Part shown: positions 1 through 64,000 of the stretch, piece after piece
Position numbering within the stretch: the first letter of the stretch is position 1
Layout of the letters: each line of letters opens with the position of its first letter
Source: Sphyrna mokarran
Lineage: Eukaryota
Assembly: GCA_024679065.1 (NCBI GenBank)
Contig: JAGIQG010000008.1
Coordinates: 97,278,001 to 97,342,000 of the forward strand
Reading direction: 5' to 3'
Length of the DNA: 64,000 nucleotides
Translations under genes and position numbers: made by a program
The notes under the pieces: model-generated
Told to the model about the DNA's origin: nothing
Database searches by the model: none
What the model saw: the letters and a program-made list of their open reading frames with translations, nothing else

Positions 1-1247
1 CATCTTGGAATTTGGTGGAAGGCATGTCGCTGTATAGATGTGAAAAAGATAGTGCTGCAGAATACTGCTCTGCCTCATGGCCCCGCAGTCGCTCACAATT
101 CCAATTCCATTAAGGCAGCAATTTTTCAATTTACTGTCATTTTTTTCTATTATCTGTTTATCATAGATATTTTTCTATTCAGATTTCCCTTTTTTTTAAG
201 CCAGCTTCATGAAGCTTTTGCTTTCCTTGCAAGTGGTGAGGTTCCGCTTTCTGTCTTCACTGTTCCATAAGATGTGTTAGCCTTGTGCTTTTTTTTTTGA
301 AGGCTTGCTTTCAGTATTCGTTGGTTTCTTTCATTTCATCAGGTCTTTATTATTGCATTGATATTTGTGAGAACTTGCTTTGTACATAATGATCTTGGAC
401 ATGTCAGAGTCATTTAAGTTCAGCCTACCATCCATAAGGTGTTGAAAAACTGCAAAGAATGTTAAAAGTGTGCTGACCTTTCTGGGAAACTGCAGCTAAT
501 ATCCATGCATCCATTGTGCAACCCAGAAGGAGAGAATTGTGGGCATGTGCAACATAAACCCACATATCATCAGTCATCCAACAACAGAGGTCACCAGCTT
601 CGACCTCCAACAAGACAGTGGATGGCACTCAATATTGTGTGTGCACAATGAGGGGCAACCTGGGGTGCAATTGTGACCATCAGTTCCTGTCAATGGATCC
701 CATCGCAACAGTTCTTCCACTAATATCTATTACAGGAGGCATCCCATTTCTCTTGGCAGTGGAATACATTGCAACAACCTTTCCACTGATACCTGTTGCA
801 GGAGGCATCTCATTTCTCCACTCAGAAGCCACTGAATAGACAGTAAAACCAAACATCTCATTATAAGCTGTCCTTGTCATACAACAATAATAATAGTGAA
901 AAAAATGGAAAATTGTTGTGATAAGAAAGCTCAGTGAGATGGAACTAATGCCCTTACATAGAGTTGATTCTATACCTTAACTTAGAATGGTTAATGTTGA
1001 TGGAACACAGTGGAAAATGGTATTGCGAAATCTATTCCCTTCATCGTTAAGAATCCAAACTTGAAATAATAATCACATCTCTTCTTTTCACAGCTGCTAG
1101 TGGATCTGCTGTTTATTTCTAGTGTTTTCTATTTTCAATTCCAATATCCCATCTCTTTTACGTTATGTTGTAATTTATTCTATCAACATCACTAAAAACA
1201 TACCATCAAGTCTTTATTGCATTGATGTTTGTGAGAACTTGCTGTAC

Positions 1248-1332
1248 AGGAAGACACAAGAGTGTTGAAAGCTCGCAATTTTACTATCAAATAAATCGGT
1301 TGGATTAAAAATTGGTGTTGCTAAATTCTTAC
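1248..1332 (+). mobile_element. 85-bp Penelope pLTR fragment inserted in a Deu-type SINE
   Basis: AGGAAGACACAAGAGTGTTGAAAGCTCGC..GCTAAATTCTTAC; removing it restores the host sequence cttgctgtac|acaaattg. Confidence 0.85.
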
Positions 1333-1702: not shown

Positions 1703-1974
1703 GTGGCACAGTGACACATTAGTTAGCACTACTGCGCCTCAGCATCAGGGACCCGGTTTTGATTCCTGGCTTGGGTCACAGTCTGTATGGAGTTTGCACA
1801 TTCTTGTCGTGGCTGCATGGGTTTTCTCAGGATGCTCCAGTTCCTCCCATAGTCCAAACACGTGCTAGTTAAGTGCAGTGACCCGAACAGGCACCGAAGT
1901 GTTGCAACTAGGGTAGTTTCACAGTACCTTCATTGCAGTGTTAATGTAAGCCTTATTTGTGACTAATAAATAAA
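1703..1974 (+). mobile_element. HE1-type tRNA/V-SINE, Rex1-like tail variant
   Basis: A/B-box head, V-domain, tail ..TTTCACAGTA..TGTGACTAATAAATAAA. Confidence 0.88.
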
Positions 1975-2016
1975 TGTTAGTTTATAACTATAACTATATT
2001 ATAGTATATTTATACT

Positions 2017-13800: not shown

Positions 13801-15507
13801 TTGTCTTTCTAAAAGGGAAGACTATTTGATGTTGCCAGAATGCATAAACAACGCTTTACAAATGGATGATAACACATTTAAAATTTAATGGTTTGAGTGT
13901 AGGATGTGAATTCTCCACTTATCACAGCAAATGGGAGGAATCAGTTTTTCTAAGATTCTTGTAACACCTTCCATCGGATCGTGTGCTGCTCACAGGGAAA
14001 TTAATGATGAAATATGCGGATTTGATTCCAAGCTAAAATACCGGTTAAATATATCATTTAATTTTAAGCAGGTTTGAAGAAATAAAAAACAGGAGACTGA
14101 CTTGAATAGTTTTGAACCTACGACAGAGAGACCACCATGTTTGTGGTTACGAGTAACTATCTCACAATAGCATAAATACTAATAACTACCAGAGCAGATC
14201 AGAACCTGAGAATTCTGTGGCAAGTAACTCATCTGAACCCCGAAAGCCAGTTCACCATTTACAAGACACAGGTCAGGGGTTATGATGAATTACTGTCCTT
14301 TTGCCCAGGCGAGTACAGCTCCAACAAGCACTCAAGAAGCTCAACAGGGTAAAGCAGCCCGCTTGACTGGCACCCCATCACCATTTTAGGCATTCACTTG
14401 CTAGACCCTTAGCACACGATAGCAGCAATGTGCACCATCTATAACATGCACTGCAATAACTCACCAAGGCACCTTCAGTAGCACCTTCCAAATCAATGAT
14501 CTCTACTGGAAAAGGGCAAGGGTAGCAGATGCATGAAAATGCCGCCACTTGTGAGATCCCCCCAAGCCTACACACCAGACTGACTTGAAGCTTAAAAGCC
14601 AGTTCTTTACTGTGAGCTGGTCAAAATCTTGGAACTGTCTTCCTATGGATGTATCCACATCAGATTCAAAACAGCAATTCGAGAAAGTGGTTCACCCCCC
14701 CCCCCACCTTCTCAAATATAAATGGGGATGAATGACAAATACTGGTCAACAATGCTCATATCCCACGAAAGAATAATATAAACCTTAACCTTAAACCAAC
14801 AATAAAGCTAATGCTGTGGCTCTAACTTTAAGCCTAAACCCAAATATCCTTTTGCTAGGTGGATGAAATTAGGTCCAAAAACAATTAAAGTGAGAACTTG
14901 TCAAAAACTGTAAATGTTCGGGATTATGTAATTTAGCAGCGTAGTTCTGAGATGGATAACGGATAAGACATTGTCCCATCAGCAGAAATTTACATGCATA
15001 TTCTGATTTGTCTAAGCATCTTATCTGGAGATGGATAATGGCAAACTGACCTGGACAAAAGGCAATAGAAAACACGAGAGAACCAAAAATGTCAGATTCC
15101 ATAGATTATTAAACTCAAACGGGAATTTATAAACAAGACAATACAATCTCTGTCCTAATCCCCAACTATTATCCTGACACAATACAGCCAGCCCTACTCA
15201 TAACCTTAGCCTTACTCTAACCTAACCCAATTTGGAAGCTTAATTTTCTGGGGTAGCCTTGAACCCTAACCTCCAATCTTCAACTCTGAACCCCAAACAC
15301 TAAAACTGAGCTCTGAACCTCTGATCGGGATTGGAATTCCCATTTTCGACCCTGGTCGGGCAGAAAAATGCTCATGAACTTCCCCTGATTTTTCTGGGCA
15401 GTACTTCTGATGGGGGCTGCAGCCTAACAGACGCAGTAGAGGAAGTATAGGAGAGAGCAGTGAAGCGAAGCCCTGGAGAAGACATTCCCCCCTGTTTACT
15501 GTATGAG

Positions 15508-15606
15508 CTCAGTAAGAATTTAGCAACACCAATTTTAAATCCAACTGATTTATTTGATAGTAAATCTGCGAGCTTTCGACACTCTTGTGCCTTCGTCAGG
15601 CAAATG
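15508..15606 (-). mobile_element. Penelope pLTR fragment (may extend to about 15800)
   Basis: starts CTCAGTAAGAATTTAGCAACACC exactly like 61409 and is homologous through the ribozyme. Confidence 0.85.
15564..15605 (-). ncRNA. Minimal type-I hammerhead ribozyme
   Basis: reverse complement reads AUUUGC-CUGACGA-A-GGCAC-aaga-GUGUC-GAAA-GCU-C-GCAGAU: 6-bp stem I, 5-bp stem II. Confidence 0.8.
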
Positions 15607-17502
15607 AGCTGCCATATTCCATTAAATAGAGTTTAAATGTCCCAAAGCTACAAAGAGAGAAGGTAAGAGTGCAAAAAGGTAAAGGTGGTAAAGCTAAGTT
15701 GGGGTCGGGAGGAAATCGAGATTTTAGTGAATTGTGAGTTCCTGTCAAGTGCGAGTGAGTCCAAAGATCAGGGTGGAGTTTGAGGTCAATCATTTGATTA
15801 CCCAGGAGTTAGTCTCAGATTTATCTGTGTAATGTTTTCTGGGCAGGTATTTAAACATGTACATCAGACTGTAACTCGGACTTTGATACTTGGAGGGTAC
15901 TGAGGATCGGGGGAATTACCCATCTGAAGTTCAAACTTCCTAGGCAATTCCCAGAGCGGACATCCGAGGGGTCTCCTACTGCATCTTGGAGGGGAAGGGG
16001 TAAGACACGTATGATCTCTGACTATCCAGAGGCTGGAAGATTTGGGCTGGTATGCTTAGGGAATAAGTATAGAGACAGCGAAAGAGCAAAAAAAAGGAAA
16101 AGGAGATGGAGAGATTAAATAATTAAAGAGGTTGTGGTGAAAGGCTATAGACGCTGGCAATAGGGCAAATAAAGAAATAAAGTATTGAGAGAAGGTGAAA
16201 TGTGAAAACAGAGTTCATCACCAGCAATTGCTGCAAACTTTAAATAACACTCGAAAGGTGGAGCCGCCCTCTGTGTTTTCAGCATTTTCTGTTCTTATTT
16301 CAGAATTCCAGGATATTCCCGTCAGGGGCCGATGAAAAACCGTTCTGCATCCTAATAATGGGAGCTCTTAGGGGGGAGAGAGAGAAATGCTGCAGGATCA
16401 CTGAGTGGGTAAACTGGTATAGAGTGGGAGAATGGGACGGACAGAAGTGGCGCACAGAAAGTGCTGAGTGTTCAGATGTAAATGGGGGATGGGAATGGGG
16501 TTCAGAGGGAGGGGATCTGTGGTGTCATCCACTGAGTTCATGGGAACATACTGAACTGGTGATAGGAAGGGATGATGTGAGTTAGACGGGACAATGAAAG
16601 CCAATAGGGTGGGTTGGTGAGGGTTCAATAGTGACGGCTGAAGGGACACTGAGGGGATGCAGAAGGAGAAGTGGATTCTGGAGATCGGCAGGATGTAGGG
16701 AGGGCAGATCTACCATTATGGGATTGGGGGCCTTGGGGAGGGATGGATTGTGGACATTCAGCTGCACAAGCTGGAGGATGAGGGGATGGGTTAAAGGGTA
16801 ACCATGAAAACATGAGAAGGTTAAATGTTACACCTGGGGCCAGGGGTTAATGGTTATGGGATGAGAGTGTGGGTAACAGTGGGAGAAGTAAAAATATTTG
16901 ATTGAATGCCAAAGGTACAAATAGCCACTTGCAACTATCTAGAGCTTGGTGCCACAAGGGACGGGAAGAAGGGGAACCATTTTGGAAAAGGACCACACAA
17001 AATTCCCCAAGTTTGATTAATCCTCAAGATGGTTGAAGTACCACCTAGAGGACAAGGTATCCAGCCTCAAATGTTCGAGGGGAAGTAATAACAGGAATGC
17101 CATGAGCTCTCAACTTTTGTTTCATTTCACATTACTTGAGTCTAGTTTTAAGACCAATCCCATTTTGCAAAGAGTGTGAATAAAGGATCGAAGAAAAAGT
17201 TTTGCAATCATTAACCTTCATTCATTTTAGCTTCCATTGTTTAATAACTAAGCCGACGCTAACTTGAGACAGAGTTGAGCTCTCAATGATTTTCCAGTGC
17301 TTTGGGGCGTTGCGCAATAGTCACCCACCATAAACAACTTTCAAGAATGTACATCTATGTTTATTGCCTGTGGATCACTGAGCTGGAACTTCTATGCATC
17401 GCGCGTGCTTTTTCCTACGTTACAATCATGTATAAGGACAGCTTGTGCCATCAAATGAGGACTAATATTATCACGCGAACCCTCTGCACAGTAGGAAACC
17501 AT

Positions 17503-17649
17503 GATGTACAGATGCCGGCGTTGGATTGGGGTGGTAAGAACTCAGTAAGAATTTAGCAACACCAATTTATAATCCAACCGATTTATTTGATAGTAAAAAA
17601 GCGAGCTTTCGACTCCTGTGTCTTCCTCAGGCCTGCTAAATTCTTACTG
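17503..17649 (-). mobile_element. Penelope pLTR-only insertion with a short inverted end (same subfamily as 61409-63294)
   Basis: near-identical to the reverse complement of 63164-63292; inverted TGCTAAATTCTTACTG(AG) at 17634-17651; 13-bp duplication AGTAGGAAACCAT at 17490-17502 and 17650-17662. Confidence 0.92.
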
Positions 17650-18004
17650 AGTAGGAAACCATACAGGCCCATTGTAGCTATCGTACTGAAGGGTTTTTGA
17701 TGCACTGAGTAGCGGCGTCTTTGCCTCTGAGCTAGAAGCTGTGGCTTCGAGTGCCACCCAATTCTCGATGACCAAGGAAGGTACATTTTTAATGTGATCA
17801 ACAGGGTGAGTTATCAACCTCCAAAATTCTTCCAATATATGCCGCTAAGAGGTGGTAAGAGCGGGAGAGACTCCTGTCGGCCGTATTTTTGGAGAGATTT
17901 TCCTCAAACTCAAGCTGCTAGAGAACTATTTCCCGGGAGGTGGGGGGCGGAATCATTGCGGGAACAGATGAAAGTCTGCCTTGTTGTGCACCATTAGCTG
18001 ACGG

Positions 18005-18883: not shown

Positions 18884-19155
18884 CACGGGTGGCACAGTGG
18901 TTAGCACTGCTGCCTATCAGAACCAGGGACTTGGGTTCGATTCCTGGCTTGGGTCACTGTCTGTGTGGAGTTAGAGTGTTCTCCTTGTGTCTGCGTGGGT
19001 TTCCTCCGGGTGCTCCGGTTTCCTCCTACATTCAAAAAGACTTGGTTAGGTGCATTGATCCGAATCCCCGATCTGTGGCGATTAGGGGATTTTCACAGTA
19101 ACTTAATTGCAGTGTTAATGTAAGTCTTACTTGTGATGCTAAATAAACTTTACTT
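18884..19155 (+). mobile_element. HE1-type tRNA/V-SINE, Rex1-like tail variant
   Basis: GTGGCACAGTGGTTAGCACTG (A box), GGGTTCGATTCC (B box), V-domain, same tail as 1703-1974. Confidence 0.92.
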
Positions 19156-19159
19156 TATC

Positions 19160-24382: not shown

Positions 24383-24677
24383 GCGGTTAGCATTGCTGCC
24401 TCACAGCGCCAGGGCTCTGGTTCGGTTTCTGGCTTGGTCACTGTTTGTCGGACTCTGCATGTTCACCCCATGTCTGCATGGGTTTCCTCTGGATGCTCCA
24501 GTTTCCTCCCAACAGTCCGAAAGATATGCTGGTCAGCTGCATTGGCCATGCTAACTTCTCCCTCAGTGTACCCAAACAGGCACTGGAGTGTATCAACTAG
24601 GAGATGTTCACAGTAACTTCATTGCAGTATTAATGTAAGCTTACTTGTGACACATAAACTTTAAACTTTGAAACTTT
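24383..24677 (+). mobile_element. HE1-type SINE, Rex1-like tail variant
   Basis: homologous to 18884-19155. Confidence 0.9.
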
Positions 24678-26073: not shown

Positions 26074-26503
26074 GAGGCGTACACGCGATGGGTTGTGAGA
26101 AGGCTGCTGTTGGAGTTTTTTTTCGAGAGTATCCTAGTGCTTCGTGTCGTTAGTGTACACTTGACCTGGACCATTTGGTGGGCAACATGACAGCTCAGTG
26201 ACTATCACTGTGCTGTGCAGACACATCAATTTGGGCCTGTGTCTGTGAGAGTTTGCGCATTCTCCTCCTGCTCGCGTCGGTTTTCTCTGGGTGCTCCGGT
26301 TTCGTCCCACATCCCAAAAATGTGCTCTTGGGCTGATTGGCAAAACAAATTCTCCCTAAATTGTCTCAGATTTGGTTTCAACCCATAGACATATAAACAC
26401 AACAGGGATCACGGGCAAAAGTGGGAACATCAAGGTGGCGGCGCGGGCTCGTTGGGCCAAAGGACCTGTTTCCCGTGCTGTTTTGTTCTTTGTTGTTCTT
26501 TGA
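26074..26503 (+). mobile_element. V-domain SINE-like element with a non-tRNA structured head (family X), apparently full length
   Basis: about 115-nt unique head, V-domain GTCTGTG..GGGTGCTCCGGTTTC..CCCACA, CR1-like 3' end and (TTCTTTG)n tail; collinear with 32228-32638. Confidence 0.85.
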
Positions 26504-27280: not shown

Positions 27281-27597
27281 TAGAATCTCTACAGTACAGA
27301 AAGAGGCCACTCAAGTCTGCACTGACCACAATCCCACCAGGCACGACCCCCCATATCCACCCACTAACCCTCTAACCTATGCATCTCAGGACTCTAAGGG
27401 GCAAATTTAGCTTGGCCAATCAACCTAACCGACACATCTTTGGATTGTGGGAGGAAACCATAGCGCCTAAAGGAAACCCATGCAGACACTAGGAGAATGT
27501 ACAAACTCCACACAGACAGTGACCCAAGCCAGGAATTGAACCCAGGTCCCTGGATCTGTGAGGCAACAGTGCTGACCACTGTGCTACTGTGCTGCCC
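27281..27597 (-). mobile_element. HE1-type SINE with CR1-like tail
   Basis: tRNA head, V-domain, GGCCTCTTTCTGTACTGTAGAGATTCT end. Confidence 0.92.
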
Positions 27598-31321: not shown

Positions 31322-31541
31322 TCAAAGAACGAAGAACAAAGAACAAAACAGCACGGGAAACAGGCCCTTTGGCCCAACGAGCCCATGCCGCCACCCCGAT
31401 GTTCCCACCTCTATCCGTGATCCCTGTCTATGTTTATAGATCAATGGATTAAAAACCAAATTTGAGACAATTTAGGGAGAATTTGTCTTCCCAATTAGCC
31501 TAAGAGCACATCTTTGGGGATGTGGGAGGAAACCAGAGCAC
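31322..31541 (-). mobile_element. Family X 5'-truncated copy inserted into an HE1-type SINE (31250-31735)
   Basis: matches the family X 3' half; host SINE resumes at cactctggtgcctg. Confidence 0.85.
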
Positions 31542-32227
31542 ACTCTGGTGCCTGTTTGGGTCAATACACCTAACCAGCACATCTTTCAGATTGTGGAAGG
31601 AAACCAGAGCACCCAGAGAAAACCCATGCAGACATGGGGAGAACATGCAGATTCCACACAGACAGTGACCCAAACCAGAAATCAAACCTGGGTCCGTAAC
31701 CCTGTGAGGCAACAATGCTAACTGCTGTGACACTAATTGCTGGGCTTTAGAAATTTCCAGAACACCTAATTGTTCCTAAAATGGAGGTTCAGACATTTAT
31801 TCCTGTTTGAATAATGGAATCAGGATAGAAGAGATGGAGCTATATAACACCAGGTGGGCTTAGTTAGCAGGAGAGCTTGGAGATGTAATATCTATATCGT
31901 TTGCAAAGAAGTGAAGTCCAGAGAGAGGTTTTGGTTTGGGAGTTGGAGCTAAATGAGTTGAAAAGGATTCAGTGAATCCCATGGTGATAGGTGGAGTTTA
32001 AGAAGGTACAATTGATCTAAAATACAGGATGATTTGACTCCTCAAGTGGAGGCTCAGGAATGACACTGTGCAGTCTGATACCACAGAATTGTCTGGCAAA
32101 ATACAATAAGCATGTGGGCAAGAGTTTACAAACTCTATCCTTTTAACAACACACATGAATGTGCTGCAATTCATGTGGTGCAGATACACCTACAGTATTG
32201 TGGGCTAGGGAGTGACAGGACTTCAAT

Positions 32228-37615: not shown

Positions 37616-37925
37616 ATAGAAAGCCTGCAATGCAGAAGGAGGCCATTTAGCTGACTGAGTATGCACTGACCATAATCCCACCCAATCCTATTTCTGTAAC
37701 CCCACATATTTACCTGAAAAATCCCCTGACGCTAGGGTCAATTTTCATGGCCAATCAACCTAACCTGCACATCTTTGGACTGGGGAAGGAAACCAGAGCA
37801 TGCAGAGGAAACCCACACAGACAATGTGCAAACTCCACACAGACAGTGACCCAAGGGTGCAAGAGAACCTAGGTCCCTGGTGCTGGGAGGTAGCGGCTCT
37901 AACCACTGTTGCCACCGTGCTGCCC
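37616..37925 (-). mobile_element. HE1-type SINE with CR1-like tail (IFITM intron)
   Basis: homologous to 27281-27597. Confidence 0.9.
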
Positions 37926-38568: not shown

Positions 38569-41131
38569 CCAGAGACACTTGCCAAACGCAGAAAGGGAAA
38601 TGTTTCAAAATAGAAGTCACAGATTCTGCTGCAGAACAAACTTTCTGTGACTGAGTCAACACACAAAGCAAACTGCACCCACCGTGCAAATTTACGGTGA
38701 AAATATTTTTTATACAATGGTTTTATGTTCTGTCTGTAACTCTTTTACTCTGGAGTTTGTTTTTTACTTTCTGAATACTCAATTGCAAACTATTGTCAAT
38801 ATATTCACCTAGAATTGAAAATGAATCAAAATTTTAGCCCTTAGGAAATGATGATAAATCCTGAAACTGTAAAATTGCGGATTGGTTCTAGGAAACTGGA
38901 GACTGAAGAACAAAGATTAGGGTTGAAGATTGGCAATTGGGGTAAGGGTATTAGACATTGGAGAATAGGAACTTGGGACTGGGGACTTGGGACTGCTAGC
39001 TAGAGAAAGGAATGGCAGACTGGAGGCTGAGCACAGTGTACTGGAAATTGGAGAATAGGGCTTGAAGACTGGGGTTTGGGGACTGAGAGTGGAGATTGGG
39101 GAATGGAGACAAGGCTAGGGAGAGGAATCATGGCCCCGGTGCTTCTTTGTTTCCAGCTGTCTTATTCCTGGAACCCTCCTGAAATCCAAGCCCTCAAACA
39201 TGTGTGTTACTTTCTCCCCACTTCAAGATTCATAATTAACTCACCAAAGAATTACAGAAAAGTTCTAGTAAATGTTACATCCATTGTTGACATTGAGTTA
39301 CAAATAAATCTGATATGTGCAGCATAGATTATTAATATTAAGAGTAGCAATAATAAGCAATTAATATTAAAGGTATGTTAGTTTTTGTGTGCCCTACATG
39401 GATTCCACTGTAATAATTAAACACACCAGGGGGTACAAGTTTTATCTAAACGGCATTGTGCAATATTATTACTTTGACAGCAAAATATCCCATTAGTTAT
39501 TTATAACACTGCAAAAGACAACACTGATTGCTATGACTAGTTAACATGTTTTATACATTGCATCGTACATGGTGACGGTAATTCATCAACAAAACCAGGA
39601 ACTTTGAAATAAAAATAAAAAATGCTGGAAAAATCTACGGACGGCAACAAAATTAAAGTATCAGGTTGATCACCTTCTATTAGAAAAGGAGGAAAGATTA
39701 AATAATATTCATAACATTTTAATTTATGTATATTTGACTTGCTGCTTTGTAGAGAAAGGAAAGGCTGGCTCCATCTTGCAGTTGGCACTGTTACATTGTT
39801 AGAGAATTGTAGAAGGGAGTAGGGAGAGAGGTAGGAAAGGAAGGAGCAGAGGATATGGTCCCATTCACTCAATGCTGCCTGAACTCCTTCCCTCCCTTCA
39901 GTGAGGTGATTTGCGGTTTCTTTTGCTCACTAGCTTTGTGTGACTAATGGCGTGGGTTGCATTGATTAAAGAGGGAGAGAGGGGAGCCCAGCTATCTGCC
40001 TAGGATCACTCTCTCTGACTGGAAATATTCTGGGCAATGTTGATGGGGGCGATGTCATAGGGTATAGTGCGAGGGGTTAGAAGGGAGTGTTAGAGAAGAA
40101 AGGCCTCTATCAAATCCACTGCAAAGATCCATGTCATGCCAGCTAAAGCTTCCTGTACAAAATCTCACCAGTAGGCACGATAGGTTCATTTAAAAAAAAA
40201 TCAGCTTGGGCTAAATCTATGTTTATAAATTTTAACCTATTTATTTGGCATTAAATAGATGTGAACACAGGTAAAATAAATGTTCCTACAAAGCTTGCAA
40301 AAATGTTACAAATCCCTGAAGAAAGTTTCCTATTGTGAATGTCCTTCTTTGCACTACAGAGTGGGAAATAAATGCCTCATATACACGGGAAACTTAAGAA
40401 TTTAATACAGCATTGTGTAGATTAGCAATAGTGCTCAATTTCAATTACTCACTCTGAGCTTCATCTTGTCCTAATGTGGAAACCAGAAAAACAAGTGTCA
40501 GTTCCAGATTAAAATCCCATGAAAATCAATGTTCCCCTCCGTTCAAAATAAAGTCCCATTAGGATCAGCTTTTGTCCAAAAGATAAATGCCAGAATTTTA
40601 CACCCTCTACCCCACGGGCAGGTCTGAGGCAAGGGGAGTGTGAGATTACATGGAGGGGATTCCCTCTGGGTTTTCACTTGCCCCAATCTGAGAGTGATTT
40701 TATGCTGGGGCAGGCAGGGCTAGGGAAGAGAACCTCACCCTTGCCCAAATGAAACTCTCCAGTGGCCACTTAATTGCTATTTGAAAGCCTTTTCCTGCCC
40801 AGTCTCAGGTTTTAGGCTGGTGGATAGCTCAGTGGGGAGAGGCCGGATTGAGTTAGGTCCCCAGTGGGAATGGGTGGCGCACCTGCATCAGAAGTTCTTA
40901 TTTGACAGGGGGTGCCCTCTCCTTAAAACCCTCAAGACACTGGGTTACCCATTTTGCTCACTTCCAGGCCTTCCCTACCTTAGGACATTCTGAAAGTCAG
41001 ATATAGTTGCTTGCACCACAGCTCTTCCCCTTCTGAAGCAGTGGTTGTTGTTCAGGAGCTCAGGCATCTGCTCCTCCTCCAATACCATTTTCAGGTTGCT
41101 GATGGAGAGGAGGGCTGTTGCTGCTGGGGTG

Positions 41132-41331
41132 TTGTAGAGATGCCGGCGTTGGACTGGGGTAAACACAGTAGGAAGTCTGACAACACCAGGTTTAAGTCCA
41201 ACCGATTTATTTGATAGTAAACTCACAAGCTTTCGAGGTGTTTCGACCTCTTCGTCAGGTGAATCACTATCGTCAGGTGAGTTTACTATCAAATAAATCA
41301 GTTGGACATAAACCTGGTGTGTCAAACTTCC
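41132..41331 (-). mobile_element. Penelope pLTR-only insertion with inverted arms (distinct subfamily)
   Basis: tail + pLTR on the minus strand at 41132-41264; inverted copy at 41277-41331; 13-bp duplication TGCTGCTGGGGTG at 41119-41131 and 41332-41344. Confidence 0.9.
41221..41264 (-). ncRNA. Minimal type-I hammerhead ribozyme
   Basis: reverse complement reads AUUCAC-CUGACGA-A-GAGGU-cgaaac-ACCUC-GAAA-GCU-U-GUGAGU: full core, 6-bp stem I, 5-bp stem II, palindromic AGCU stem III. Confidence 0.8.
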
Positions 41332-43326
41332 TGCTGCTGGGGTGACCACGATGGGGCACATGCTGGGCGGTGAAGCTGTGGGCTGGATGGTATCCTACGA
41401 GCTTGCTGAACATGGACAATGGACATTCAACTCGCGACCAACGCCATCCATGTCCTTAGAACGGTTGTGCTCAGACCCAATATCATATGCCGTCTTGAGG
41501 GAGCTAACTGTGTGGGGGATCCCATCTGAGTGTATCCATACTCAAACGGAATTTCACAGCCTAGAACCCCCCTTTCCGGGTTGAACACCCCACAGTTTGA
41601 GCTGTCTTGAGGAAATGCTCTCTGTGCTCTTTGCCACTGTACAGAGAGATTTCCTGTATGGGTTGCTGCCGCACACCTTCCACTATTGTGTCCTTGCCCA
41701 TCGCCCAGATATGCCTTGGCGCGCCTTGTTGCCATCCGGTGCGGAGGTCCCCTGTGGAGGTCCCTTGACGAAGGGACCCTCCCACAATATATCAGGGACC
41801 TGGGGTGGAGGCTAGTACTAGGCAACACTAAACTGCACCAGATCACAGGCTCCAAGAAACTTGCCCTTTCTACAACCTTGTTAAGACAGTGGACCATGTC
41901 CATGTTCACTGTTTTAAGTTGCACTCTCTTTTTTGTTACATGAAAATCCTTTTATTCATTTTCTATTTGCACTTCAGTTCTACGCTCCTGATCAATGAAC
42001 ACCAGGTATGGAGGGGGGGAGGGGGGGTGCGGGAAAGGCAAAGGACCTTATCATGTACCTGCTCCTGGGCCTGGCCAGACTCACCATAAACAGGTCCAGA
42101 CAGAAGGTGAGCGAGGGGGTCAATTGACCCAATTGTCTGCCCCTCTATCTCAGCTACATTCACAGCGGGGTATCCCTGGAGAGGGAGCACACTAAGTCCA
42201 TGGGCACTATCGAGGCTTTCCATGCCTGCTGGGCCCCGCAGGGACTGGGGTGTATTATTGACTCTTTTAATCTCATTTTGATTTGATTTTTTAAGTTTCC
42301 TTTATGCTTTGGTTTATTTTGTTTGGGGCGGTTCTCCATCTTTTTAAGAAGTCGCCCCTTTTACTTTGTCCCTCCATTTATTTGATTTAGTTTATTTGGA
42401 TGGCCAAAAAGATGCCCTTCCTATCTTGGCACCTGAATTCCTGACTTGCCTCCCATTCCCTGGATCTTGGCTCAGGAATCTTCTTGCACCACGTGCTATT
42501 CACGAAGAGACTGAAAGACTGCCTGCCAATCTGATTGAATGGCAAGTTCTCCAAGGTGAAACTTTCCCTGACCCAACAGTGGACAACAAAGTTCCCTTAC
42601 CTTGAGTCTTGGGACTCTGAGCATGGGGTTTAAAAAAACATTCTGGACTAGGTATAGATTTTCCAGTCAGTTGAAAGTTCAGATAGTCGCCCTTGCAGAA
42701 GTACTTGTTCATAATTTTACCTCACTTCTCTTCTTGAGGTCAAGACTCAGTGTTGACAGGAAAACATGCAGCACGGTGACATTTGTAAGCACAGTACTCA
42801 CACTTGATGGTTTATGATTTATGTACGTATCAACATGCTGCAAATACAATCAGATCACTGGATTGAATAAATAATGACCGAGAAATAGTAACAATGAAGA
42901 GGAGGAGGAGAAACGCTGGATGAATGGAGATGTGCTCTCACTGTTTAGTCTGGTCAATGACCATTTACAAAGACTCGTCTTGGTCTAGCTAGCCCCAGGA
43001 CCTGGTGATCTGTACCTTGTATATAACCCCCTCTCTCAGGCCCTGTGCAATGCCTCTGGTATACACTGTGAGGGTGATATTTGTGAGCCATGGTCCTAGG
43101 CGAGACAGTCTCAAGAAATACACAAGATCATGAGTTTTTGTGTCAGTAGACAAAGAACAGCGGTTTACATTAGCTGCTGATATAAGAACCAGGCAGATAG
43201 AGATTTACAGCTTTCTCAATTGCAAGGATGTGAAGAAGGATTTTATTATGTAGCATGTGCTGAAGACTTATGAGTGCTGTGAAAGCGATTGCTATCAATG
43301 ATTTCAAAAAGAAATTGGATAGACTT

Positions 43327-59400: not shown

Positions 59401-61408
59401 TCGGAATCCTACCGTGCAGAAGGAATCCATTCAGAGCATCAAGTCTGTCCTGACCACAATCCCACCCAGGCCGCTGTCCTTGTCACCCACATGCTTACCT
59501 TGCTAATCCCCCTGACACTAGGGTCAATTTAGCAAGGCCAATCAGCCTAACCTGTACATCTTTGGACTGTGGGAGGAAACTGGAACCCCCAGAGGAAACT
59601 CACCCATAAAATACAATATGTAAAGCTGTACTACAGTGTAACATGTTTACAAGAATGATGATGCAGCAGTGCTTTTAGATTGATCATGCATTATATAGTT
59701 GAAGGAACTAGTCAGTGCTGTTAGCAGCTGAAATCCTGGCTATTTGCACCAATCCAAGTTTGCCACTTGATGGAGTCAAAGCATCACTGCAAGTTCATCA
59801 ACATGCGCTAAGTGTGAAAGGAAATAAGGAACAACTGGTTCAGCCATCCACTTTCCCTTTCTTTCTCTCTCTTTCTCCCTCCCTCTTTCCTCCACTTTCT
59901 CTCACTCTCCCTTTAAATCTTTGTCTCGTTTTCCCTCTACCGCCCTCTTTGCTTCCTCTTATTTGCGCTCCTTCTCTCTGTGTCTCACTCACTTTCTCTT
60001 TTCAAACTCTCTGTCTCCCTCTTGTTCTCTTGTACCCTTTTCCCTTTCTCTGTCCTCTCCTGTTCCTCCCCCCATCTCTCTGTTAGTCTGCAAAAGGAAC
60101 CTAATTTGTATGTTGCCGAGGCTAGTGGATTCTGGGAGCAGTATTTCTCCTGCAGTGTGTGAGGAAGGGGGAACTGCAGCCTTTAAACGTATTTAGTTGA
60201 AGTACAGAATTTTCCATTGTGTACAAAGAGAATAAACATTGAGACAGAGTGGCTGGAGCCAGATTGACTGAAGCAATTATCTCCATGCTTTGTTGATTAT
60301 GTGGGGGCCCACTTACACCAACCTCAACTTCTGACCACAACAATGTGGATCCATCCAGCTCCTAATGTTCAGGCTTCTCATTTTTACTGATCACAATTAG
60401 ATTTTTTATTTAGGGTTCTTGTGCAATTACTTTATTTTGAAACTGAAATTCTGAATTGAATAGCCAAGACTTGGATTCCAGTGAGAACAGAATTTCAGTC
60501 TGATTGTTGACATGTTTAGTACCAGCTTAATTAACTATATCCTGTAATTAGAAATAAGTAACTGCTGAGATTCCAGTCTCAGATACCCATTTGTCTAGAT
60601 TTCCAGTACGGATGCGCAAAGCCAAATTTCCCACTTTAGACAATTATATGAATGAACAACATGTAAATAGACCCTTTGGCCCAACTTATCTATGCTGACC
60701 AAGTTTCCTAAATTGAATTAGTCCCATTTGCCTGCTTTTGGTCCACATCCCTCTAAACATTTCCAATCCATGAACCCATTCAAATGTCTTTTAAATGTTG
60801 TAACTATACCCACATCTACCATCTCCTCTGACAGCTCATTCCATATACGCACCACCTTCTGTGCGAAAAAGTTGCCCCTTAGATCCTTTAAATATTTCCC
60901 CTCTCACTTATGCCCTTAGACTCCCCTACCCTGAGGAAAAGACCTATTTTCCTTATCTGGGCCCCTCATGATTTAATTAACCTCTTATATTTATCCAAAT
61001 GTTTTTTAAATGCAGCTGCCTCAATCACTTTCTTTGGCAGCTCATTCCGTTCATGCACCACTCACTGTGTGAAGAAGTTGCCCCTTGGGTCCCTTTTAAA
61101 TCTTTCCCTCCCCCTTAAACGTATGTTCTCTGCACTGTACGGTTTCTATGATTCTGAGATTCTATGATTCCGGGACATCAACACTTTGTCCATGGTCCCA
61201 ACCTTCTTTAGAATGGGGAAGGGGATTGAGGGGATAATACAAATCGTGAATTTAACGAGATCCCATGTTCTAAACAAAGTCCTCTGAGCATGCTTTCCTC
61301 AGTGAAGTTGAAACCCTGCATTTGAATGTGAAATACCGGACTAAAGCAAGTACAACATCTTCAGCCAGAGTGCTGCGAGAATAATCCAACCTGGCCACTT
61401 CTGGAGAT

Positions 61409-63294
61409 CTCAGTAAGAATTTAGCAACACCAATTTATAATCCAACCGATTTATTTGATAGTAAAAAAGCAAGCTTTCGACTCTGTGTCTTCCTCAGGCA
61501 AATGTAGTGTTCTGGTCTGCAATAGCACACATCAGCACAGACAGTCAGAGATTGCTGATTAGAATGCGAATCCTTACATCTAACCTGCTATTCAAGTGTT
61601 AAAGTGGCTAACAATGTGTGTGAAGGGAATCCTGAGCATTGGTTAGAGAATTGTGTATTTTCTCCAGACAGCACAGTAAGTGAGGTTTTTTGCTAACCCA
61701 GGCAAGTTACGGGGGTTACAGATAGTGTGTCATGAAGCCAAGATCCCTGTTAAGACCGTCCTCATGTGTGCGGAGCTTGGCTATCAGTCTCTGCTCAGCG
61801 ACTCTGCGCTGTCGTGTATCACGAAAGCCCCCTTGAAGAACATTTACCCGCAGGTCGGAGGCCGAATGCCCATGACTGCTGAAGTGTTCGCCCACAGGAA
61901 GGGAACTGTTTTGCCTGGTGATTGTTGAGCGATGCTCATTCATCCGCTGTCGTAGTGTCTGCATGGTCTCCCCAATATACCATGCTTCAGGACATCCTTT
62001 CTTGCAACGTATTAGGTAGACAACGTTGGCTGAGTTGCAAGTGTATGTACCGTGTACCTGGTACATACCAGAATGCTCTACTTCTCCAGCTTCCACCCTA
62101 GACACTTTAAAGAAGCCATTCCCTATGGACAAGCCCTCCGTATACACAGAATTTGCTCAGATGAGGAGGATCGTGATAGACACCTCCAGACGCTGAAGGA
62201 TGCCCTCGTGAGAACAGGATATGGCGCTCGACTCATCGATCGACAGTTCCGACGTGCCACAATGATAAACCGCACTGACCTCCTCAGAAGACGAACACGG
62301 GACACGGTGGACAGAGTACCCTTTGTTGTCCAGTACTTCCCCGGAGCGGAGAAGCTACGACATCTTCTCCGGAGTCTTCAACATATCATTGATGACGATG
62401 AACATCTCGCTAGGGCCATCCCCACCCCCCACTTCTTGCTTTCAGACAACCGCACAACCTCAAACAGATCATTGTTCGCAGCAAACTACCCAACCTTCAG
62501 GAGAACAGTGACCACAATACCACACAACCCTGCCACAGCAACCTCTGCAAGACATGCCGGATCATAGACATGGACGACATCATCAAACGTGAGGATACCA
62601 TTCACCAGGTACACGTTACATACACTTGCAACTCGGCCAACATTGTCTACCTAATACGTTTCAAGAAAGGATGTCCCGAAGCATGATATATTGGGGAGAC
62701 CATGCAGACACTACGACAGCGGATGAATGAGCATCGCTCAGCAATCACCAGGCAAAACAGTTCCCTTCCTGTGGGCGAACACTTCAGCAGTCATGGGCAT
62801 TCGGCCTCTGACCTGGGGGTAAATGTTCTTCAAGGGGGCTTTCGTGATGCACGACAGCGCAGAGTCGCTGAGCAGAGACTGATAGCCAAGCTCCGCACAC
62901 ATGAGGACGGTCTTAACAGGGATCTTGGCTTCATGACACACTATCTGTAACCCCCGTAACTTGCCTGGGTTAGCAAAAAACCTCACTTACTGTGCTGTCT
63001 GGAGAAAATACACAATTCTCCAACAATGCTCAGGATTCCCTTCACACACATTGTTTGCCACTTTAACACTTGAATAGCAGGTTAGATGTAAGGATTCGCA
63101 TTCTAATCAGCAATCTGACTGTCTGTGCTGATGTGTGCTATTGCAGACCAGAACACTGCATTTGCCTGAGGAAGACACAGAGTCGAAAGCTCGCTTTTTT
63201 ACTATCAAATAAATCGGTTGGATTATAAATTGGTGTTGCTAAATTCTTACTGAGTTCTTACCACCCCAATCCAACGCCGGCATCTGTACATCAT
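61409..63294 (+). mobile_element. Penelope-like retroelement (Neptune type), 5'-truncated, with an inverted 3' arm
   Basis: 62073-62950 encodes the RT C-terminus (FSSFHP..AIPYGQALRIHRICS), the PCHSNLCKTC linker and a GIY-YIG endonuclease (VYLI..YIGET..LRQRMNEH..GLN), with a frameshift near 62425 and TGA at 62684; 61409-62062 is the reverse complement of 62604-63254; duplication CACTTCTGGAGATCTC at 61396-61411 and 63295-63310. Confidence 0.95.
63160..63194 (+). ncRNA. Minimal type-I hammerhead-ribozyme motif in the Penelope pLTR (mirror copy at 61469-61503, minus strand)
   Basis: gc-CUGAGGA-A-GAC-acaga-GUC-GAAA-GCU-C-gc; stem I is only 2 bp in this subfamily. Confidence 0.65.
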
Positions 63295-63654
63295 CACTTC
63301 TGGAGATCTCCAGCATCACAAATACCAGCCTGCAGCCGAATAAATTCGCCTGACATGATATCAAGATTTCCAAAACCCAACAGATGCTTCGTTTTCTCCT
63401 TCTGTCACCCCTCAATGAAATATCAGCACTGTCAAGCTGGATTTTCTTTCTCAAATCCGTGATGACCATGTTTGAAATTAAGGGAGGCAACATGAGGCCT
63501 AAAATCAATAGTAAAATGGATAAGAGAGTGAGAGGCAGGAATATAAAGACCTGGGAACAGAGGCAATGCACTATTCAGAGAGACTGTACTTGTACAAAAC
63601 AGCATGAGTCAATAGAGGGCATCAGAAGCTAAAATGAAATGTTCCCACAACGCG

Positions 63655-64000
63655 TGCAGAATGTTTACGAATGTTTGAGCGTTTCCGTATGTTCCAAAGT
63701 GTTTCTGATCGTCTCTGACTGTCTTTGAGTGTTTTAAATGATTCTGAATGTTTCTCAGTGTTTTGAGTGTTTCTGAAAGTCTCTGAATGTTTTTGAATGT
63801 TTCTGAGTGTTTCTTACTATTTCTCATCTTTCACAGTGTTTCTTAGTGTGTTTCAATGTTCCTAAGTGTTTCTCGGTGTTTCTCAGTATTTCTTGATGTT
63901 TTTGAGAGTTTCTTGGCATTTCTCAGTATTTCTCAGTGTTTCCCAATGTTTCTGAGTGTATCTCAGTGTTTGTGTTTCTCAGTGTTTCTGAGTATTTCTC
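63655..64000. repeat. 10-bp minisatellite (TGTTTCTSAG)n, runs off the window end
   Basis: repeated tgtttctcag / tgtttctgag. Confidence 0.9.

What the first reader, a model, noticed from the sequence alone, without database searches (positions are those of the whole stretch)
15564..15605. Covarying minimal hammerhead ribozymes across three Penelope subfamilies
Seen: six pLTR copies (1248, 15564, 17601, 41221, 61469, 63160) share CUGANGA-A-[stem II]-GAAA-GCU-H; the 1248 copy is cut inside the core. Stem II changes sequence but keeps pairing (GGCAC/GUGUC, GAGGU/ACCUC, GAC/GUC), as does stem I (AUUUGC/GCAGAU vs AUUCAC/GUGAGU). The predicted cleavage base varies only between C and U, never G. Established: Penelope-like elements carry minimal type-I hammerheads whose palindromic stem III suggests dimeric cleavage. 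Inference: these are selected shark variants with an extra A after the core and an AGCU dimerisation palindrome.
Basis: partly seen in the sequence, partly recalled or inferred. Interest (0 to 1): 0.8.

Follow-up and report, generated by a model that had tools for sequence, protein, structure and literature searches.

The report
Minimal hammerheads in shark Penelope ends
These are six copies of the small self-cutting RNA motif that Penelope-like jumping genes are already known to carry near their ends, here in a shark-type genome: real, but an ordinary member of a described class.

Summary
The motif is real. Five intact copies and one copy cut in the core sit at the stated places. All lie in the 3'-terminal module of Penelope-like element (PLE) insertions. 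One insertion still carries the GIY-YIG endonuclease reading frame 209 nt upstream. Target-site duplications, inverted 5' arms and the optional 36-nt PLE "tail" are all present.

These are the extra base after A9, G10.1-C11.1, the palindromic AGCU with no helix III, covarying stems and a dimer model.

Covariation exists but rests on one lineage split, 41227 against the rest. There are 5 double-sided pair changes, stems changed at 13 of 22 bases and the core at 0 of 15. GAC/GUC is a shortened stem, not covariation.

Three copies (63166, 61471, 17603), the closest-matching set in the window (97-99% identical), have only 2 contiguous stem I pairs and a 3-bp stem II. The C/U cleavage base sits in a CpG, so decay explains it.

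Cleavage was not testable because only contigs were available, not raw reads. First readers noted the same motif in many other windows of this genome. Low interest.

The parts
15564..15605 (-). Hammerhead copy 'B' (the finding). Stem I 5' strand 15605-15600, CUGACGA 15599-15593, extra A 15592, stem II hairpin GGCAC-AAGA-GUGUC 15591-15578, GAAAGCU 15577-15571, C17 15570, predicted cut between 15570 and 15569, stem I 3' strand 15569-15564.
   Evidence: The MFE fold equals the hammerhead shape at -11.5 kcal/mol, z -1.23.
15503..15610 (-). The whole insertion that holds the finding: a tail-less, 5'-cut solo 3' module of about 95-103 bp. It is flanked by a possible 7-bp direct repeat AGCTCAT (15610-15604 and 15509-15503, read on the - strand) that overlaps the first two bases of stem I.
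   Evidence: (15501-15606 against 63261-63159, 87.7%).
1248..1332 (+). 5'-cut tail-less copy. It starts inside the core (A6-N7-G8-A9-A at 1248-1252). Stem II GACAC-AAGA-GUGUU 1253-1266, GAAAGCU 1267-1273, C17 1274, GCAAUU 1275-1280, box 1281-1304.
   Evidence: Covariance model 26.9 bits, E 4e-6.
17490..17660 (-). Fold-back insertion. 11-bp target-site duplication GGTTTCCTACT at 17660-17650 and 17500-17490. 16-nt inverted arm 17649-17634. Sense arm 17632-17501 with the hammerhead (core 17630-17624, C17 17603, stem I 3' strand 17602-17597) and the tail.
   Evidence: (17501-17632 against 63294-63164, 99.2%).
41119..41344 (-). Fold-back insertion of subfamily 'C'. 13-bp target-site duplication CACCCCAGCAGCA at 41344-41332 and 41131-41119. 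Inverted tail-less arm 41330-41277; read in sense it begins at the base that follows the predicted cut. Junction filler 41276-41265. Hammerhead 41264-41221 (AUUCAC, CUGACGA-A, GAGGU-CGAAAC-ACCUC, GAAAGCU, U17 at 41227, GUGAGU). Box 41220-41197. Tail to 41132.
   Evidence: MFE equals the hammerhead shape at -13.5 kcal/mol, z -1.84.
61396..63310 (.). One PLE insertion. 16-bp target-site duplication CACTTCTGGAGATCTC at 61396-61411 and 63295-63310. Inverted arm to 62062, sense arm 62604-63294, arms 97.3% alike over 658 bp.
   Evidence: These coordinates were re-read and replace the rough ones in my note.
61465..61503 (-). Hammerhead of the inverted arm: AUUUGC, CUGAGGA-A, GAC-ACAGA-GUC, GAAAGCU, U17 at 61471, GCUUUU. 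This arm ends at the tail-less 3' end.
   Evidence: It does not fold stably as a hammerhead (-3.8 kcal/mol, z +1.44).
63160..63198 (+). Hammerhead of the sense arm: same sequence with C17 at 63192, predicted cut between 63192 and 63193.
   Evidence: The MFE is not the hammerhead fold (z +0.92).
61716..62147 (-). 143-aa open frame of the inverted arm with the GIY-YIG endonuclease domain. The sense-arm counterpart (about 62560-62950, stop at 62948-62950, 209 nt before the hammerhead) is interrupted.
   Evidence: Pfam PF01541, E 3.2e-5, 24.6 bits against a cut-off of 22.6. 39 relatives at E<=1e-5; the named ones come from three sharks and one frog.
63199..63222 (+). 24-nt box directly after stem I. 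It occurs 7 times in the window with at most 1 mismatch, and is identical between subfamilies whose stems differ completely.
63259..63294 (+). Optional 36-nt AC-rich 'tail'. It is present in the sense arms of 63166, 17603 and 41227. It is absent from 15570, 1248 and all three inverted arms.
   Evidence: Contig depth falls away after 63285-63313. The tail is described in PMC11167929.

Best explanation
The six sites are dead, 5'-truncated or fold-back copies of the 3'-terminal (pLTR) module of one group of Penelope-like retrotransposons that is very abundant in this shark-type genome.

The module reads, 5' to 3':
- a minimal type-I hammerhead: stem I, CUGANGA, one unpaired A, stem II, GAAA, then the palindrome A-GC-U in place of helix III, then C/U17;
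- an invariant 24-nt box;
- about 36 nt up to a first 3' end;
- an optional 36-nt tail up to a second 3' end.

Shown: the anatomy, the link to a GIY-YIG frame, the target-site duplications and inverted arms, the abundance, and compensatory stem changes between two subfamilies around an unchanged core.

Inferred from published work on the family: in the RNA of master elements, two hammerheads pair through AGCU/AGCU to build a 4-bp helix III. They then cut after position 17, slowly and perhaps with help from other factors. This processes longer-than-unit transcripts.

The copies in this window are by-products of retrotransposition and have no role of their own at these loci. The three closest-matching copies (63166, 61471, 17603) carry a weakened hammerhead with a 3-bp stem II and a stem I broken by UUU. 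That fits reports that cleavage is not needed for insertion.
For: Motif and count.

PLE context: GIY-YIG domain, contiguous sequence, relatives in Mustelus asterias (5 named proteins), Chiloscyllium punctatum, Heptranchias perlo and Ascaphus truei. Target-site duplications of 11, 13 and 16 bp, and inverted arms, occur in 3 of 3 tailed insertions. The two 3' ends lie 36 nt apart. This matches the 'optional 30-40 bp' tail and the two reverse-transcription start sites, used on both DNA strands, in PMC11167929 (passages).

Abundance: 71,609 contigs of run X1 and 8,681 of run X3 (another organism) lie on the 841-nt stretch, and depth ends at about 63294.

Selection on structure: 86.7% of 45 cells are paired, against 21-42% when the partner is slid by 1-3 columns. 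5 pairs show double-sided change, reached by 1 of 500 shuffles. Between 15570 and 41227 the stems differ at 13/22, the core at 0/15 and box plus rest at 9/55. The MFE fold is the hammerhead shape for 15570 and 41227.

Across the family, the listed variants of 5% or more inside the motif fall on N7 (63170), loop II, 11.1 and stem I positions 1.3-1.5. None falls on CUGA, GA-A or GAAAGCU.

Published identity of every feature: PMC4209133 and a review, PMC6765202 (passages).

One fossil consistent with cutting in vivo: the inverted arm of the 41227 insertion starts at the base after the predicted cut.
Against: No cleavage evidence could be obtained. All 24 runs offered are contigs, so there are no read ends, and run X2 is only guessed to be RNA.

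The covariation rests on one lineage split; 4 of the 5 rows belong to two close subfamilies. The structure was also derived from these same sequences, which favours it in the slid control.

Fold energies are not better than shuffles: z -1.2 and -1.8 for the best two copies, and +0.8 to +1.4 for the other three.

The double-hammerhead pairing is 5-7 kcal/mol above the dimer MFE for 15570 and 41227, and 12-13 kcal/mol above it for 63166 and 61471.

No Rfam hammerhead model is reached: 0 hits at gathering score, and at best Hammerhead_1 at 10.7 bits against 34.

In one search, 96 variant rows were not shown, so core invariance across the family is not proven. By depth, only 44-66% of copies have a base at 1.3-1.5 that would pair with AUUUGC.

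Published tests found low activity in vitro. In Anolis they found no effect of core mutants on insertion and no reads ending at the cut site.

The start of the 41227 arm is ambiguous by up to 4 nt, because TCAC-CTGACGA is repeated at the junction.
Confidence: 0.85

Rival explanations
1. The hammerhead-shaped module is kept for something other than self-cleavage. It could be a folded handle for the element's own reverse transcriptase/endonuclease, or part of the pLTR promoter or leader, with cutting absent or incidental in vivo.
For: Metazoan PLE hammerheads cut poorly even as dimers (PMC4209133). Core mutants of the Anolis element did not change insertion in vitro, and no RNA-seq reads began or ended at the site (PMC11167929). 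The three closest-matching copies here have 2 contiguous stem I pairs and a 3-bp stem II. The adjacent 24-nt box is more conserved than the stems.
Against: Exactly the catalytic bases are invariant (0 of 15 changed) while the stems are free to change in pairs. That is the signature of a ribozyme rather than of a sequence-specific protein site. PLEs of plants, fungi and protists carry efficient hammerheads at the same place. One inverted arm starts at the predicted cut.
Confidence: 0.15
2. The short copies (15570, 1248, 17603, 41227) are not randomly 5'-cut Penelope insertions. They are near full-length copies of a short non-autonomous RNA, a retrozyme-like mini-element that starts just upstream of the hammerhead and borrows the PLE 3' module.
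For: 4 of 5 independent insertions have their sense 5' breakpoint within about 20 nt of the 5' edge of the motif or inside it. A 2026 preprint derives animal non-LTR retrozymes from PLE pLTRs and reports them in its one cartilaginous fish (abstract and passages).
Against: There is no tandem head-to-tail array and no private sequence other than the PLE module. The breakpoints differ from copy to copy: inside the core, 2-3 nt, 6-8 nt and 6-18 nt upstream. The same module is contiguous with a GIY-YIG frame at 62560-63294. Five insertions are too few to show clustering.
Confidence: 0.1
3. A chance resemblance to the hammerhead core in one ancestral repeat, multiplied by copying. The pairing is coincidental.
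For: All six sites belong to one repeat family, so the count of 5 against 0.05 expected is not five independent events. Fold z-scores are unremarkable. No Rfam family is reached.
Against: Two diverged subfamilies keep 15 of 15 core bases and 11 of 11 pairs while 13 of 22 stem bases changed. The motif, including the extra base and the palindrome, is the published one for this class of element.
Confidence: 0.03

Closest known systems
Minimal hammerheads (min-HHR) of metazoan Penelope-like elements (Cervera & De la Pena 2014, PMC4209133; parts 1-2 of 4 read)
   Same: Type I with an open stem I. Core CUGANGA and GAAA. One unpaired base between 9 and 10.1. G10.1-C11.1. No helix III hairpin, with a palindromic 15.2-16.2. 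Located in the PLE terminal repeat. Mostly solitary copies from truncated elements, some close together on opposite strands. Consensus families with compensatory changes.
   Different: Family-specific stem sequences. Stem II here is 5 bp, or 3 bp in the three closest-matching copies, against 6-8 bp described for Schistosoma and Drosophila. No shark is named in the text I read.
Poseidon element of Anolis carolinensis (PAc) and its hammerhead, tail and internal start of reverse transcription (Frangieh et al. 2024, PMC11167929; passages read)
   Same: A hammerhead upstream of two alternative insertion ends about 30-40 bp apart. An AC-rich terminal region. Priming on both DNA strands, which fits a tailed sense arm plus a tail-less inverted arm in 3 of 3 tailed insertions here.
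   Different: In PAc the ORF starts at stem II. Here the motif lies 209 nt after the ORF stop, and no ORF of 120 aa or more overlaps it. PAc activity was measured; nothing was measured here.
Canonical type-I hammerheads of animals (Rfam RF00163 Hammerhead_1; Schistosoma, newt)
   Same: The same catalytic core, the same topology and a short palindromic helix III that calls for dimers.
   Different: There is no helix III stem-loop at all. No loop-loop contacts between stems I and II can be defined, because stem I is open and loop II varies. The Rfam score is 10.7 bits against a threshold of 34.
Viroid hammerhead with an extra base after A9 (De la Pena & Flores 2001; seen only as cited in PMC4209133)
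   Same: An unpaired nucleotide between A9 and 10.1.
   Different: A type III plant-pathogen ribozyme with full helices. The relation is one of form only.
Animal non-LTR retrozymes (Cervera & De la Pena 2020, search listing only; Li et al. 2026 preprint, abstract and passages)
   Same: Type-I hammerheads derived from, or shared with, PLE pLTRs.
   Different: Retrozymes are tandem arrays that give circular RNAs. The copies here are dispersed single modules or fold-backs.

Membership tests
PLE minimal hammerhead (min-HHR) | Catalytic boxes CUGANGA and GAAA, with H (not G) at position 17 | tested here: met
   5 of 6 copies are complete; copy 1248 lacks C3-U4-G5. H17 is C in 4 copies and U in 2.
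PLE minimal hammerhead (min-HHR) | One unpaired nucleotide between A9 and 10.1 | tested here: met
   It is A in 6 of 6 copies. The feature is stated in PMC4209133.
PLE minimal hammerhead (min-HHR) | G10.1-C11.1 closing pair of stem II | tested here: met
   G-C in 5 of 6 copies and G-U in copy 1248. Family-wide, C-to-U at 11.1 makes up about 8.5% by depth in X1.
PLE minimal hammerhead (min-HHR) | No helix III hairpin; palindromic 15.2-16.2 that allows a dimer helix III | tested here: met
   A-GC-U in 6 of 6 copies. The 4-bp intermolecular helix can be drawn, but the double-hammerhead pairing is not the predicted dimer MFE.
PLE minimal hammerhead (min-HHR) | Stems I and II kept by compensatory change between families | tested here: inconclusive
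   Stem II is 100% paired and stem I 76.9%. There are 5 double-sided changes, all from one lineage split. Stem I is broken in 63166 and 61471. More copies could not be fetched.
PLE minimal hammerhead (min-HHR) | Lies in the terminal repeat of an element that encodes RT and GIY-YIG | tested here: met
   A GIY-YIG frame lies 209 nt upstream in the 61396-63310 insertion. The other four insertions share only the 3' module.
PLE minimal hammerhead (min-HHR) | Self-cleavage after position 17, as a dimer | not testable with these tools
   Only contigs were available, so there are no read ends. This needs a bench assay.
Penelope-like element | Reverse transcriptase domain of the PLE/telomerase type | tested here: not met
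   The only coding copy is 5'-truncated, and no RT domain was found in it. The RVT_1 hit at 48806-49822 belongs to a different, LINE-like element with an Exo_endo_phos endonuclease. The absence here is due to truncation and does not count against the family.
Penelope-like element | GIY-YIG endonuclease domain at the C-terminus | tested here: met
   PF01541, E 3.2e-5, above Pfam's cut-off.
Penelope-like element | Optional 30-40 bp tail, target-site duplication, direct or inverted terminal repeats | tested here: met
   A 36-nt tail is present in 3 of 6 module copies. Target-site duplications of 11, 13 and 16 bp, and inverted arms, occur in 3 of 3 tailed insertions. The description is in PMC11167929.
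Rfam Hammerhead_1 (RF00163) and other Rfam hammerhead models | Score at or above the family's gathering threshold | tested here: not met
   0 matches at gathering score in the window. The best is 10.7 bits against 34 at 41221-41282. None was found at 15540-15630 or 15300-17900.
Animal non-LTR retrozyme | Head-to-tail tandem repeats, each with a type-I hammerhead | tested here: not met
   Self-comparison shows only dispersed or inverted copies.

The most novel reading that the evidence does not exclude
The subfamily represented by the three closest-matching copies in the window (63166/61471/17603 type, stem I 3' strand GCUUUU) may have lost pairing at its own cleavage site while keeping an intact catalytic core and 5' strand. 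Such an RNA could not be cut between its ORF and its 3' priming module, yet could still serve as the enzyme half of a mixed dimer with older subfamilies. Its apparent success would be in-vivo evidence that hammerhead cutting is dispensable, or even costly, for Penelope retrotransposition. By contig depth, about a third to a half of copies in run X1 carry U at positions 1.3-1.5, while none carry U at 1.4 in run X3, a different organism.
Probability: 0.1. Interest if true: 0.55.

Novelty: new member of a known kind. Interest (0 to 1): 0.2.

Why it matters
Little changes if the main reading is true. It adds a cartilaginous-fish family to a class of ribozyme-bearing retroelements that has been described since 2014, and it shows the published anatomy very cleanly (hammerhead, box, two ends, tail, fold-back arms).

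The open question in the field is whether these weak hammerheads cut in vivo and what the cut is for. This genome could help because it holds tens of thousands of copies. Genome-wide, one could ask three things. Do insertion arms start at the predicted cut more often than expected? One does so here. Does the subfamily with a broken stem I still spread? Does the box pair with the tail?

Tried and rejected
Rfam. The whole window at gathering score gave 0 matches. Permissive scans of 15300-17900, 41190-41300 and 15540-15630 gave no hammerhead match, apart from Hammerhead_1 at 10.7 bits against a threshold of 34. The weak miRNA-family matches at 41199-41300 are just the fold-back hairpin.

More copies for a real covariation test. 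I used the 24-nt box as an unbiased bait. It gave 0 hits in metagenome contigs and 0 in bacterial/archaeal genomes. In viral contigs it gave 2 hits, both chance matches inside phage-like sequence with no hammerhead. The covariance model could only be run on the window.

Expression and cut ends. All 24 runs offered are Logan contigs, so no ends can be seen. Read laying listed no place where many molecules begin or end. X2 is only guessed to be RNA.

Dimer modelling. The first attempt used a crossing structure and gave meaningless energies. It was redone with swapped stem I strands. Nearest-neighbour energies cannot score the catalytic core, so this result counts only as weak evidence.

Rejected readings. 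I rejected tandem retrozyme because there are no tandem copies. I rejected a chance motif. I rejected treating GAC/GUC as covariation because it is a shortened stem. I rejected treating C/U at position 17 as a sign of selection because it is a CpG site.

Papers. Lunse, Weinberg & Breaker (dimer cleavage of PLE hammerheads) is not held. I know it only through the review PMC6765202 (passages). The searches 'hammerhead ribozyme' + 'Penelope' + 'shark' and 'Penelope-like' + 'shark' + 'retrotransposon' turned up no description of shark PLE hammerheads. In the one hit, 'shark' refers to the shape of the motif. The hits were seen as listings only. The supplementary alignments of PMC4209133 and the species table of the 2026 preprint may bear on whether sharks were already covered.
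Full report
**What is there**

Read on the minus strand, 15564-15605 spells AUUUGC-CUGACGA-A-GGCAC-AAGA-GUGUC-GAAAGCU-C-GCAGAU. The pattern CTGANGA-N8-30-GAAAGCT-H occurs 5 times in the 64-kb window: 15570-15599(-), 17603-17630(-), 41227-41258(-), 61471-61497(-) and 63166-63192(+). Shuffles gave a mean of 0.05 and a largest count of 1 in 100.

A broader descriptor of my own allowed any palindromic 0/2/4-nt helix III, a stem II of 3 bp or more, and 0 or 1 extra base. It finds the same five, against a mean of 0.21 and a maximum of 2 in 100 Markov-1 resamples.

A covariance model built from the five was run over the window with filters off. It returns the five at 55-63 bits and the core-truncated copy at 1235-1282(+) at 26.9 bits (E 4e-6). 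The other 21 of 27 listed matches score 10.7 bits or less.

The six sites are real, and there are no others in the window. They are not six independent events, because all belong to one repeat.

**What the repeat is**

Self-comparison shows that the shared unit is only 85-132 bp: the motif plus about 66-102 nt downstream of the cut site.

At 61396-63310 the unit is part of a larger insertion. Two arms, 61405-62062 and 62604-63258, are inverted and 97.3% identical over 658 bp. They are flanked by a 16-bp direct repeat, CACTTCTGGAGATCTC.

The inverted arm carries a 143-aa open frame with a GIY-YIG endonuclease domain (PF01541, E 3.2e-5, above Pfam's cut-off). In the sense arm the same frame is interrupted and stops at 62948-62950, 209 nt before the motif.

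A protein search with the 143 aa gave 39 relatives at E<=1e-5 among 44 candidates. The named ones come from Mustelus asterias (5), Chiloscyllium punctatum, Heptranchias perlo and the frog Ascaphus truei. Several of those are gene models named after host proteins, which probably absorbed element fragments.

A retroelement with a C-terminal GIY-YIG nuclease is a Penelope-like element (PLE). The RT part is missing here because the copy is 5'-truncated.

**Insertion anatomy**

Three module copies (63166, 17603, 41227) run on for about 36 nt of AC-rich sequence to a common end. Three others (15570, 1248, 61471) stop at ...TTCTTAC(TGAG).

All 3 tailed copies are the sense arm of a fold-back. The inverted arm ends at the tail-less end next to the target-site duplication:
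- 61396-63310: 16-bp duplication, arm of at least 650 bp.
- 41119-41344: 13-bp duplication, arm of 54 nt.
- 17490-17660: 11-bp duplication, arm of 16 nt.

This matches Frangieh et al. 2024 for an Anolis PLE: an optional 30-40-bp tail lying between two internal start sites of reverse transcription, with no difference between top and bottom strand (PMC11167929, passages).

The focal copy, 15564-15605, sits in a tail-less solo insertion of about 100 bp. Its 5' breakpoint is at the very edge of stem I, with a possible 7-bp duplication.

**Abundance**

Contigs from four public runs were laid on 62560-63400. 71,609 contigs of X1 and 8,681 of X3 lie on it. X1 is guessed to be DNA, is of organism A and is possibly the source sample. 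X3 is of another organism. Depth collapses after 63285-63313, the element's end.

First readers of this scan have noted the same motif in many other windows of this genome. 165 notes hold 'hammerhead' and 'Penelope' together, and 7 also hold 'covariation' and 'stem'. Those notes are unchecked, and I did not count them as evidence.

**Is the structure under selection?**

On a five-row alignment with the structure as drawn:
- 86.7% of 45 cells are standard pairs, against 21-42% when the 3' partner is slid by 1-3 columns.
- 5 of 11 pairs show a change on both sides, a count reached by 1 of 500 shuffles.
- Stem II is 100% paired and stem I 76.9%.

All five double changes come from one copy, 41227, against the rest, so they reflect one evolutionary split. 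The structure was also derived from these same sequences.

The contrast by region is more telling. Between 15570 and 41227 the stems differ at 13 of 22 bases with every pair kept. The core differs at 0 of 15. The next 55 nt differ at 9 (Fisher p 5e-4 and 2e-4). For 41227 against 63166 the figures are 12/22, 1/15 (the free position N7) and 9/56.

The 24-nt box that follows stem I is found 7 times with at most 1 mismatch.

In the contig pile-up, the variants of 5% or more that are listed inside the motif fall on N7 (63170 G>C, 47% in X1), loop II (63178, 63180, 63181), 11.1 (63184 C>U, 8.5%) and stem I positions 1.3-1.5. None falls on CUGA, GA-A or GAAAGCU. However, 96 further rows were not shown.

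This is what a ribozyme under selection in the master copies would look like, but it rests on few lineages.

1. Stem I is not kept everywhere. 63166 and 61471 have AUUUGC/GCUUUU, with three U.U mismatches. The upstream strand of 17603 is junction sequence.
   - In X1, the shares by depth at 63195-63197 are: A 44%; A 42% plus G 24%; and A 43%. So roughly a third to a half of copies carry the non-pairing U.
   - In X3, position 63196 is A or G in all of the depth.
2. GAC/GUC is the 5-bp stem shortened, not a covarying stem.
3. The three copies with these weak stems are the most alike (97-99%). They do not fold as hammerheads (z +0.8 to +1.4). Their double-hammerhead pairing is worth only -5 to -6 kcal/mol, against a dimer MFE of -17.9. 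For 15570 and 41227 the figures are -21.3 and -24.5, against -28.5 and -29.4.
4. C17 is followed by G, so C/U at the cut site is what CpG decay gives.
5. No Rfam hammerhead model is reached.

**Does it cut?**

This could not be tested. All runs offered are contigs, and read laying lists no pile of beginnings or ends.

One genomic trace fits cutting. The inverted arm of the 41227 insertion, read in sense, begins with the base that follows the predicted cut and shows no similarity upstream of it. The junction is ambiguous by up to 4 nt, and the other two arms end elsewhere.

The published record is sobering. Activity in vitro is low, even for dimers. In Anolis, core mutants had no effect on insertion, and no reads ended at the site.

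**Comparison with what is known**

Cervera & De la Pena 2014 (parts 1-2 read) describe minimal hammerheads in the terminal repeats of all PLEs they examined, including fishes, coelacanth, Xenopus and reptiles.
- G10.1-C11.1;
- palindromic 15.2-16.2;
- families full of covariations;
- the dimer model.

They also report pairs of motifs 100-700 bp apart on opposite strands, and mostly solitary motifs from truncated elements.

A 2019 review repeats the dimer reading and cites the cleavage study of Lunse et al., which I could not read. A 2026 preprint links animal retrozymes to PLE pLTRs and includes one cartilaginous fish.

I found no paper in the held library that describes shark PLE hammerheads as such. 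Supplements were closed.

**Verdict**

This is a true, cleanly preserved example of a known thing, so a new family member and not a new kind. Interest is low.

The bolder readings that remain open are listed as the novel case and in the noticed items:
- the spreading subfamily with a broken stem I;
- fossil arms that start at the cut site;
- a box-tail helix with one compensatory change.

Noticed in passing
window 63214-63224 with 63269-63281; 41205-41195 with 41156-41144 (- strand): The conserved box just after the hammerhead (UCGGUUGGAUU) can pair with the tail (AAUCCA..GCCGG). This gives an 11-bp interrupted long-range helix, with one double-sided change (U-A to C-G) in the 41227 subfamily. 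It appears in the MFE of the 63166 constructs and of the 135-nt 41227 construct. Fold energies are not better than shuffles (z -0.1 to -0.8). It could be the stem-loop in which reverse transcription starts.
   Followed up: partly
window 63243-63265 (also 17552-17530 -): The heptamer TTCTTAC occurs twice, 4 nt apart. One copy is at the tail-less end and the other at the start of the tail. This might mark the two start sites of reverse transcription.
   Followed up: no
window 1248, 15606, 17632, 41264-41276: In 4 of 5 independent insertions the sense 5' breakpoint lies inside or within about 20 nt upstream of the hammerhead. Another first-reader note on this window (s1-887487) says the same. Five insertions are too few to test.
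   Followed up: partly
window 47185-49822 (+): Two adjacent ORFs, of 456 aa and 338 aa. They carry an Exo_endo_phos_2 endonuclease (E 6e-10) and RVT_1 reverse transcriptase (E 2.7e-16). This is a LINE-like non-LTR retrotransposon fragment, unrelated to the Penelope copies.
   Followed up: no
window 1711-1985, 18889-19158, 24386-24663, 27433-27592, 31540-31695, 37758-37919 and others: A dispersed repeat family of about 150-280 bp, at 75-83% identity, with many copies on both strands. It is probably a SINE. A first-reader note places a V-SINE at 26074-26503.
   Followed up: no
window 63690-64000: Internal direct repeats at offsets of about 40, 68 and 100 bp, 72-78% identity, at the right edge of the window. 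This is a degenerate tandem array.
   Followed up: no
Read laying on 62560-63400, run X2, loose end before 63202: A contig of run X2 carries a 41227-type hammerhead (same stem II) joined to the box, with a different stem I 3' strand. X2 is guessed to be RNA and is of the same organism as X1. If X2 is RNA, that subfamily is transcribed. This is unverified.
   Followed up: no
proteins P0015, P0032, P0036: Shark gene models named after host proteins (FAM210B isoform X1, FAM174A-like isoform X2, SNAPC5) match the Penelope GIY-YIG piece at 60-79% identity. They are likely annotation models that absorbed element fragments.
   Followed up: no
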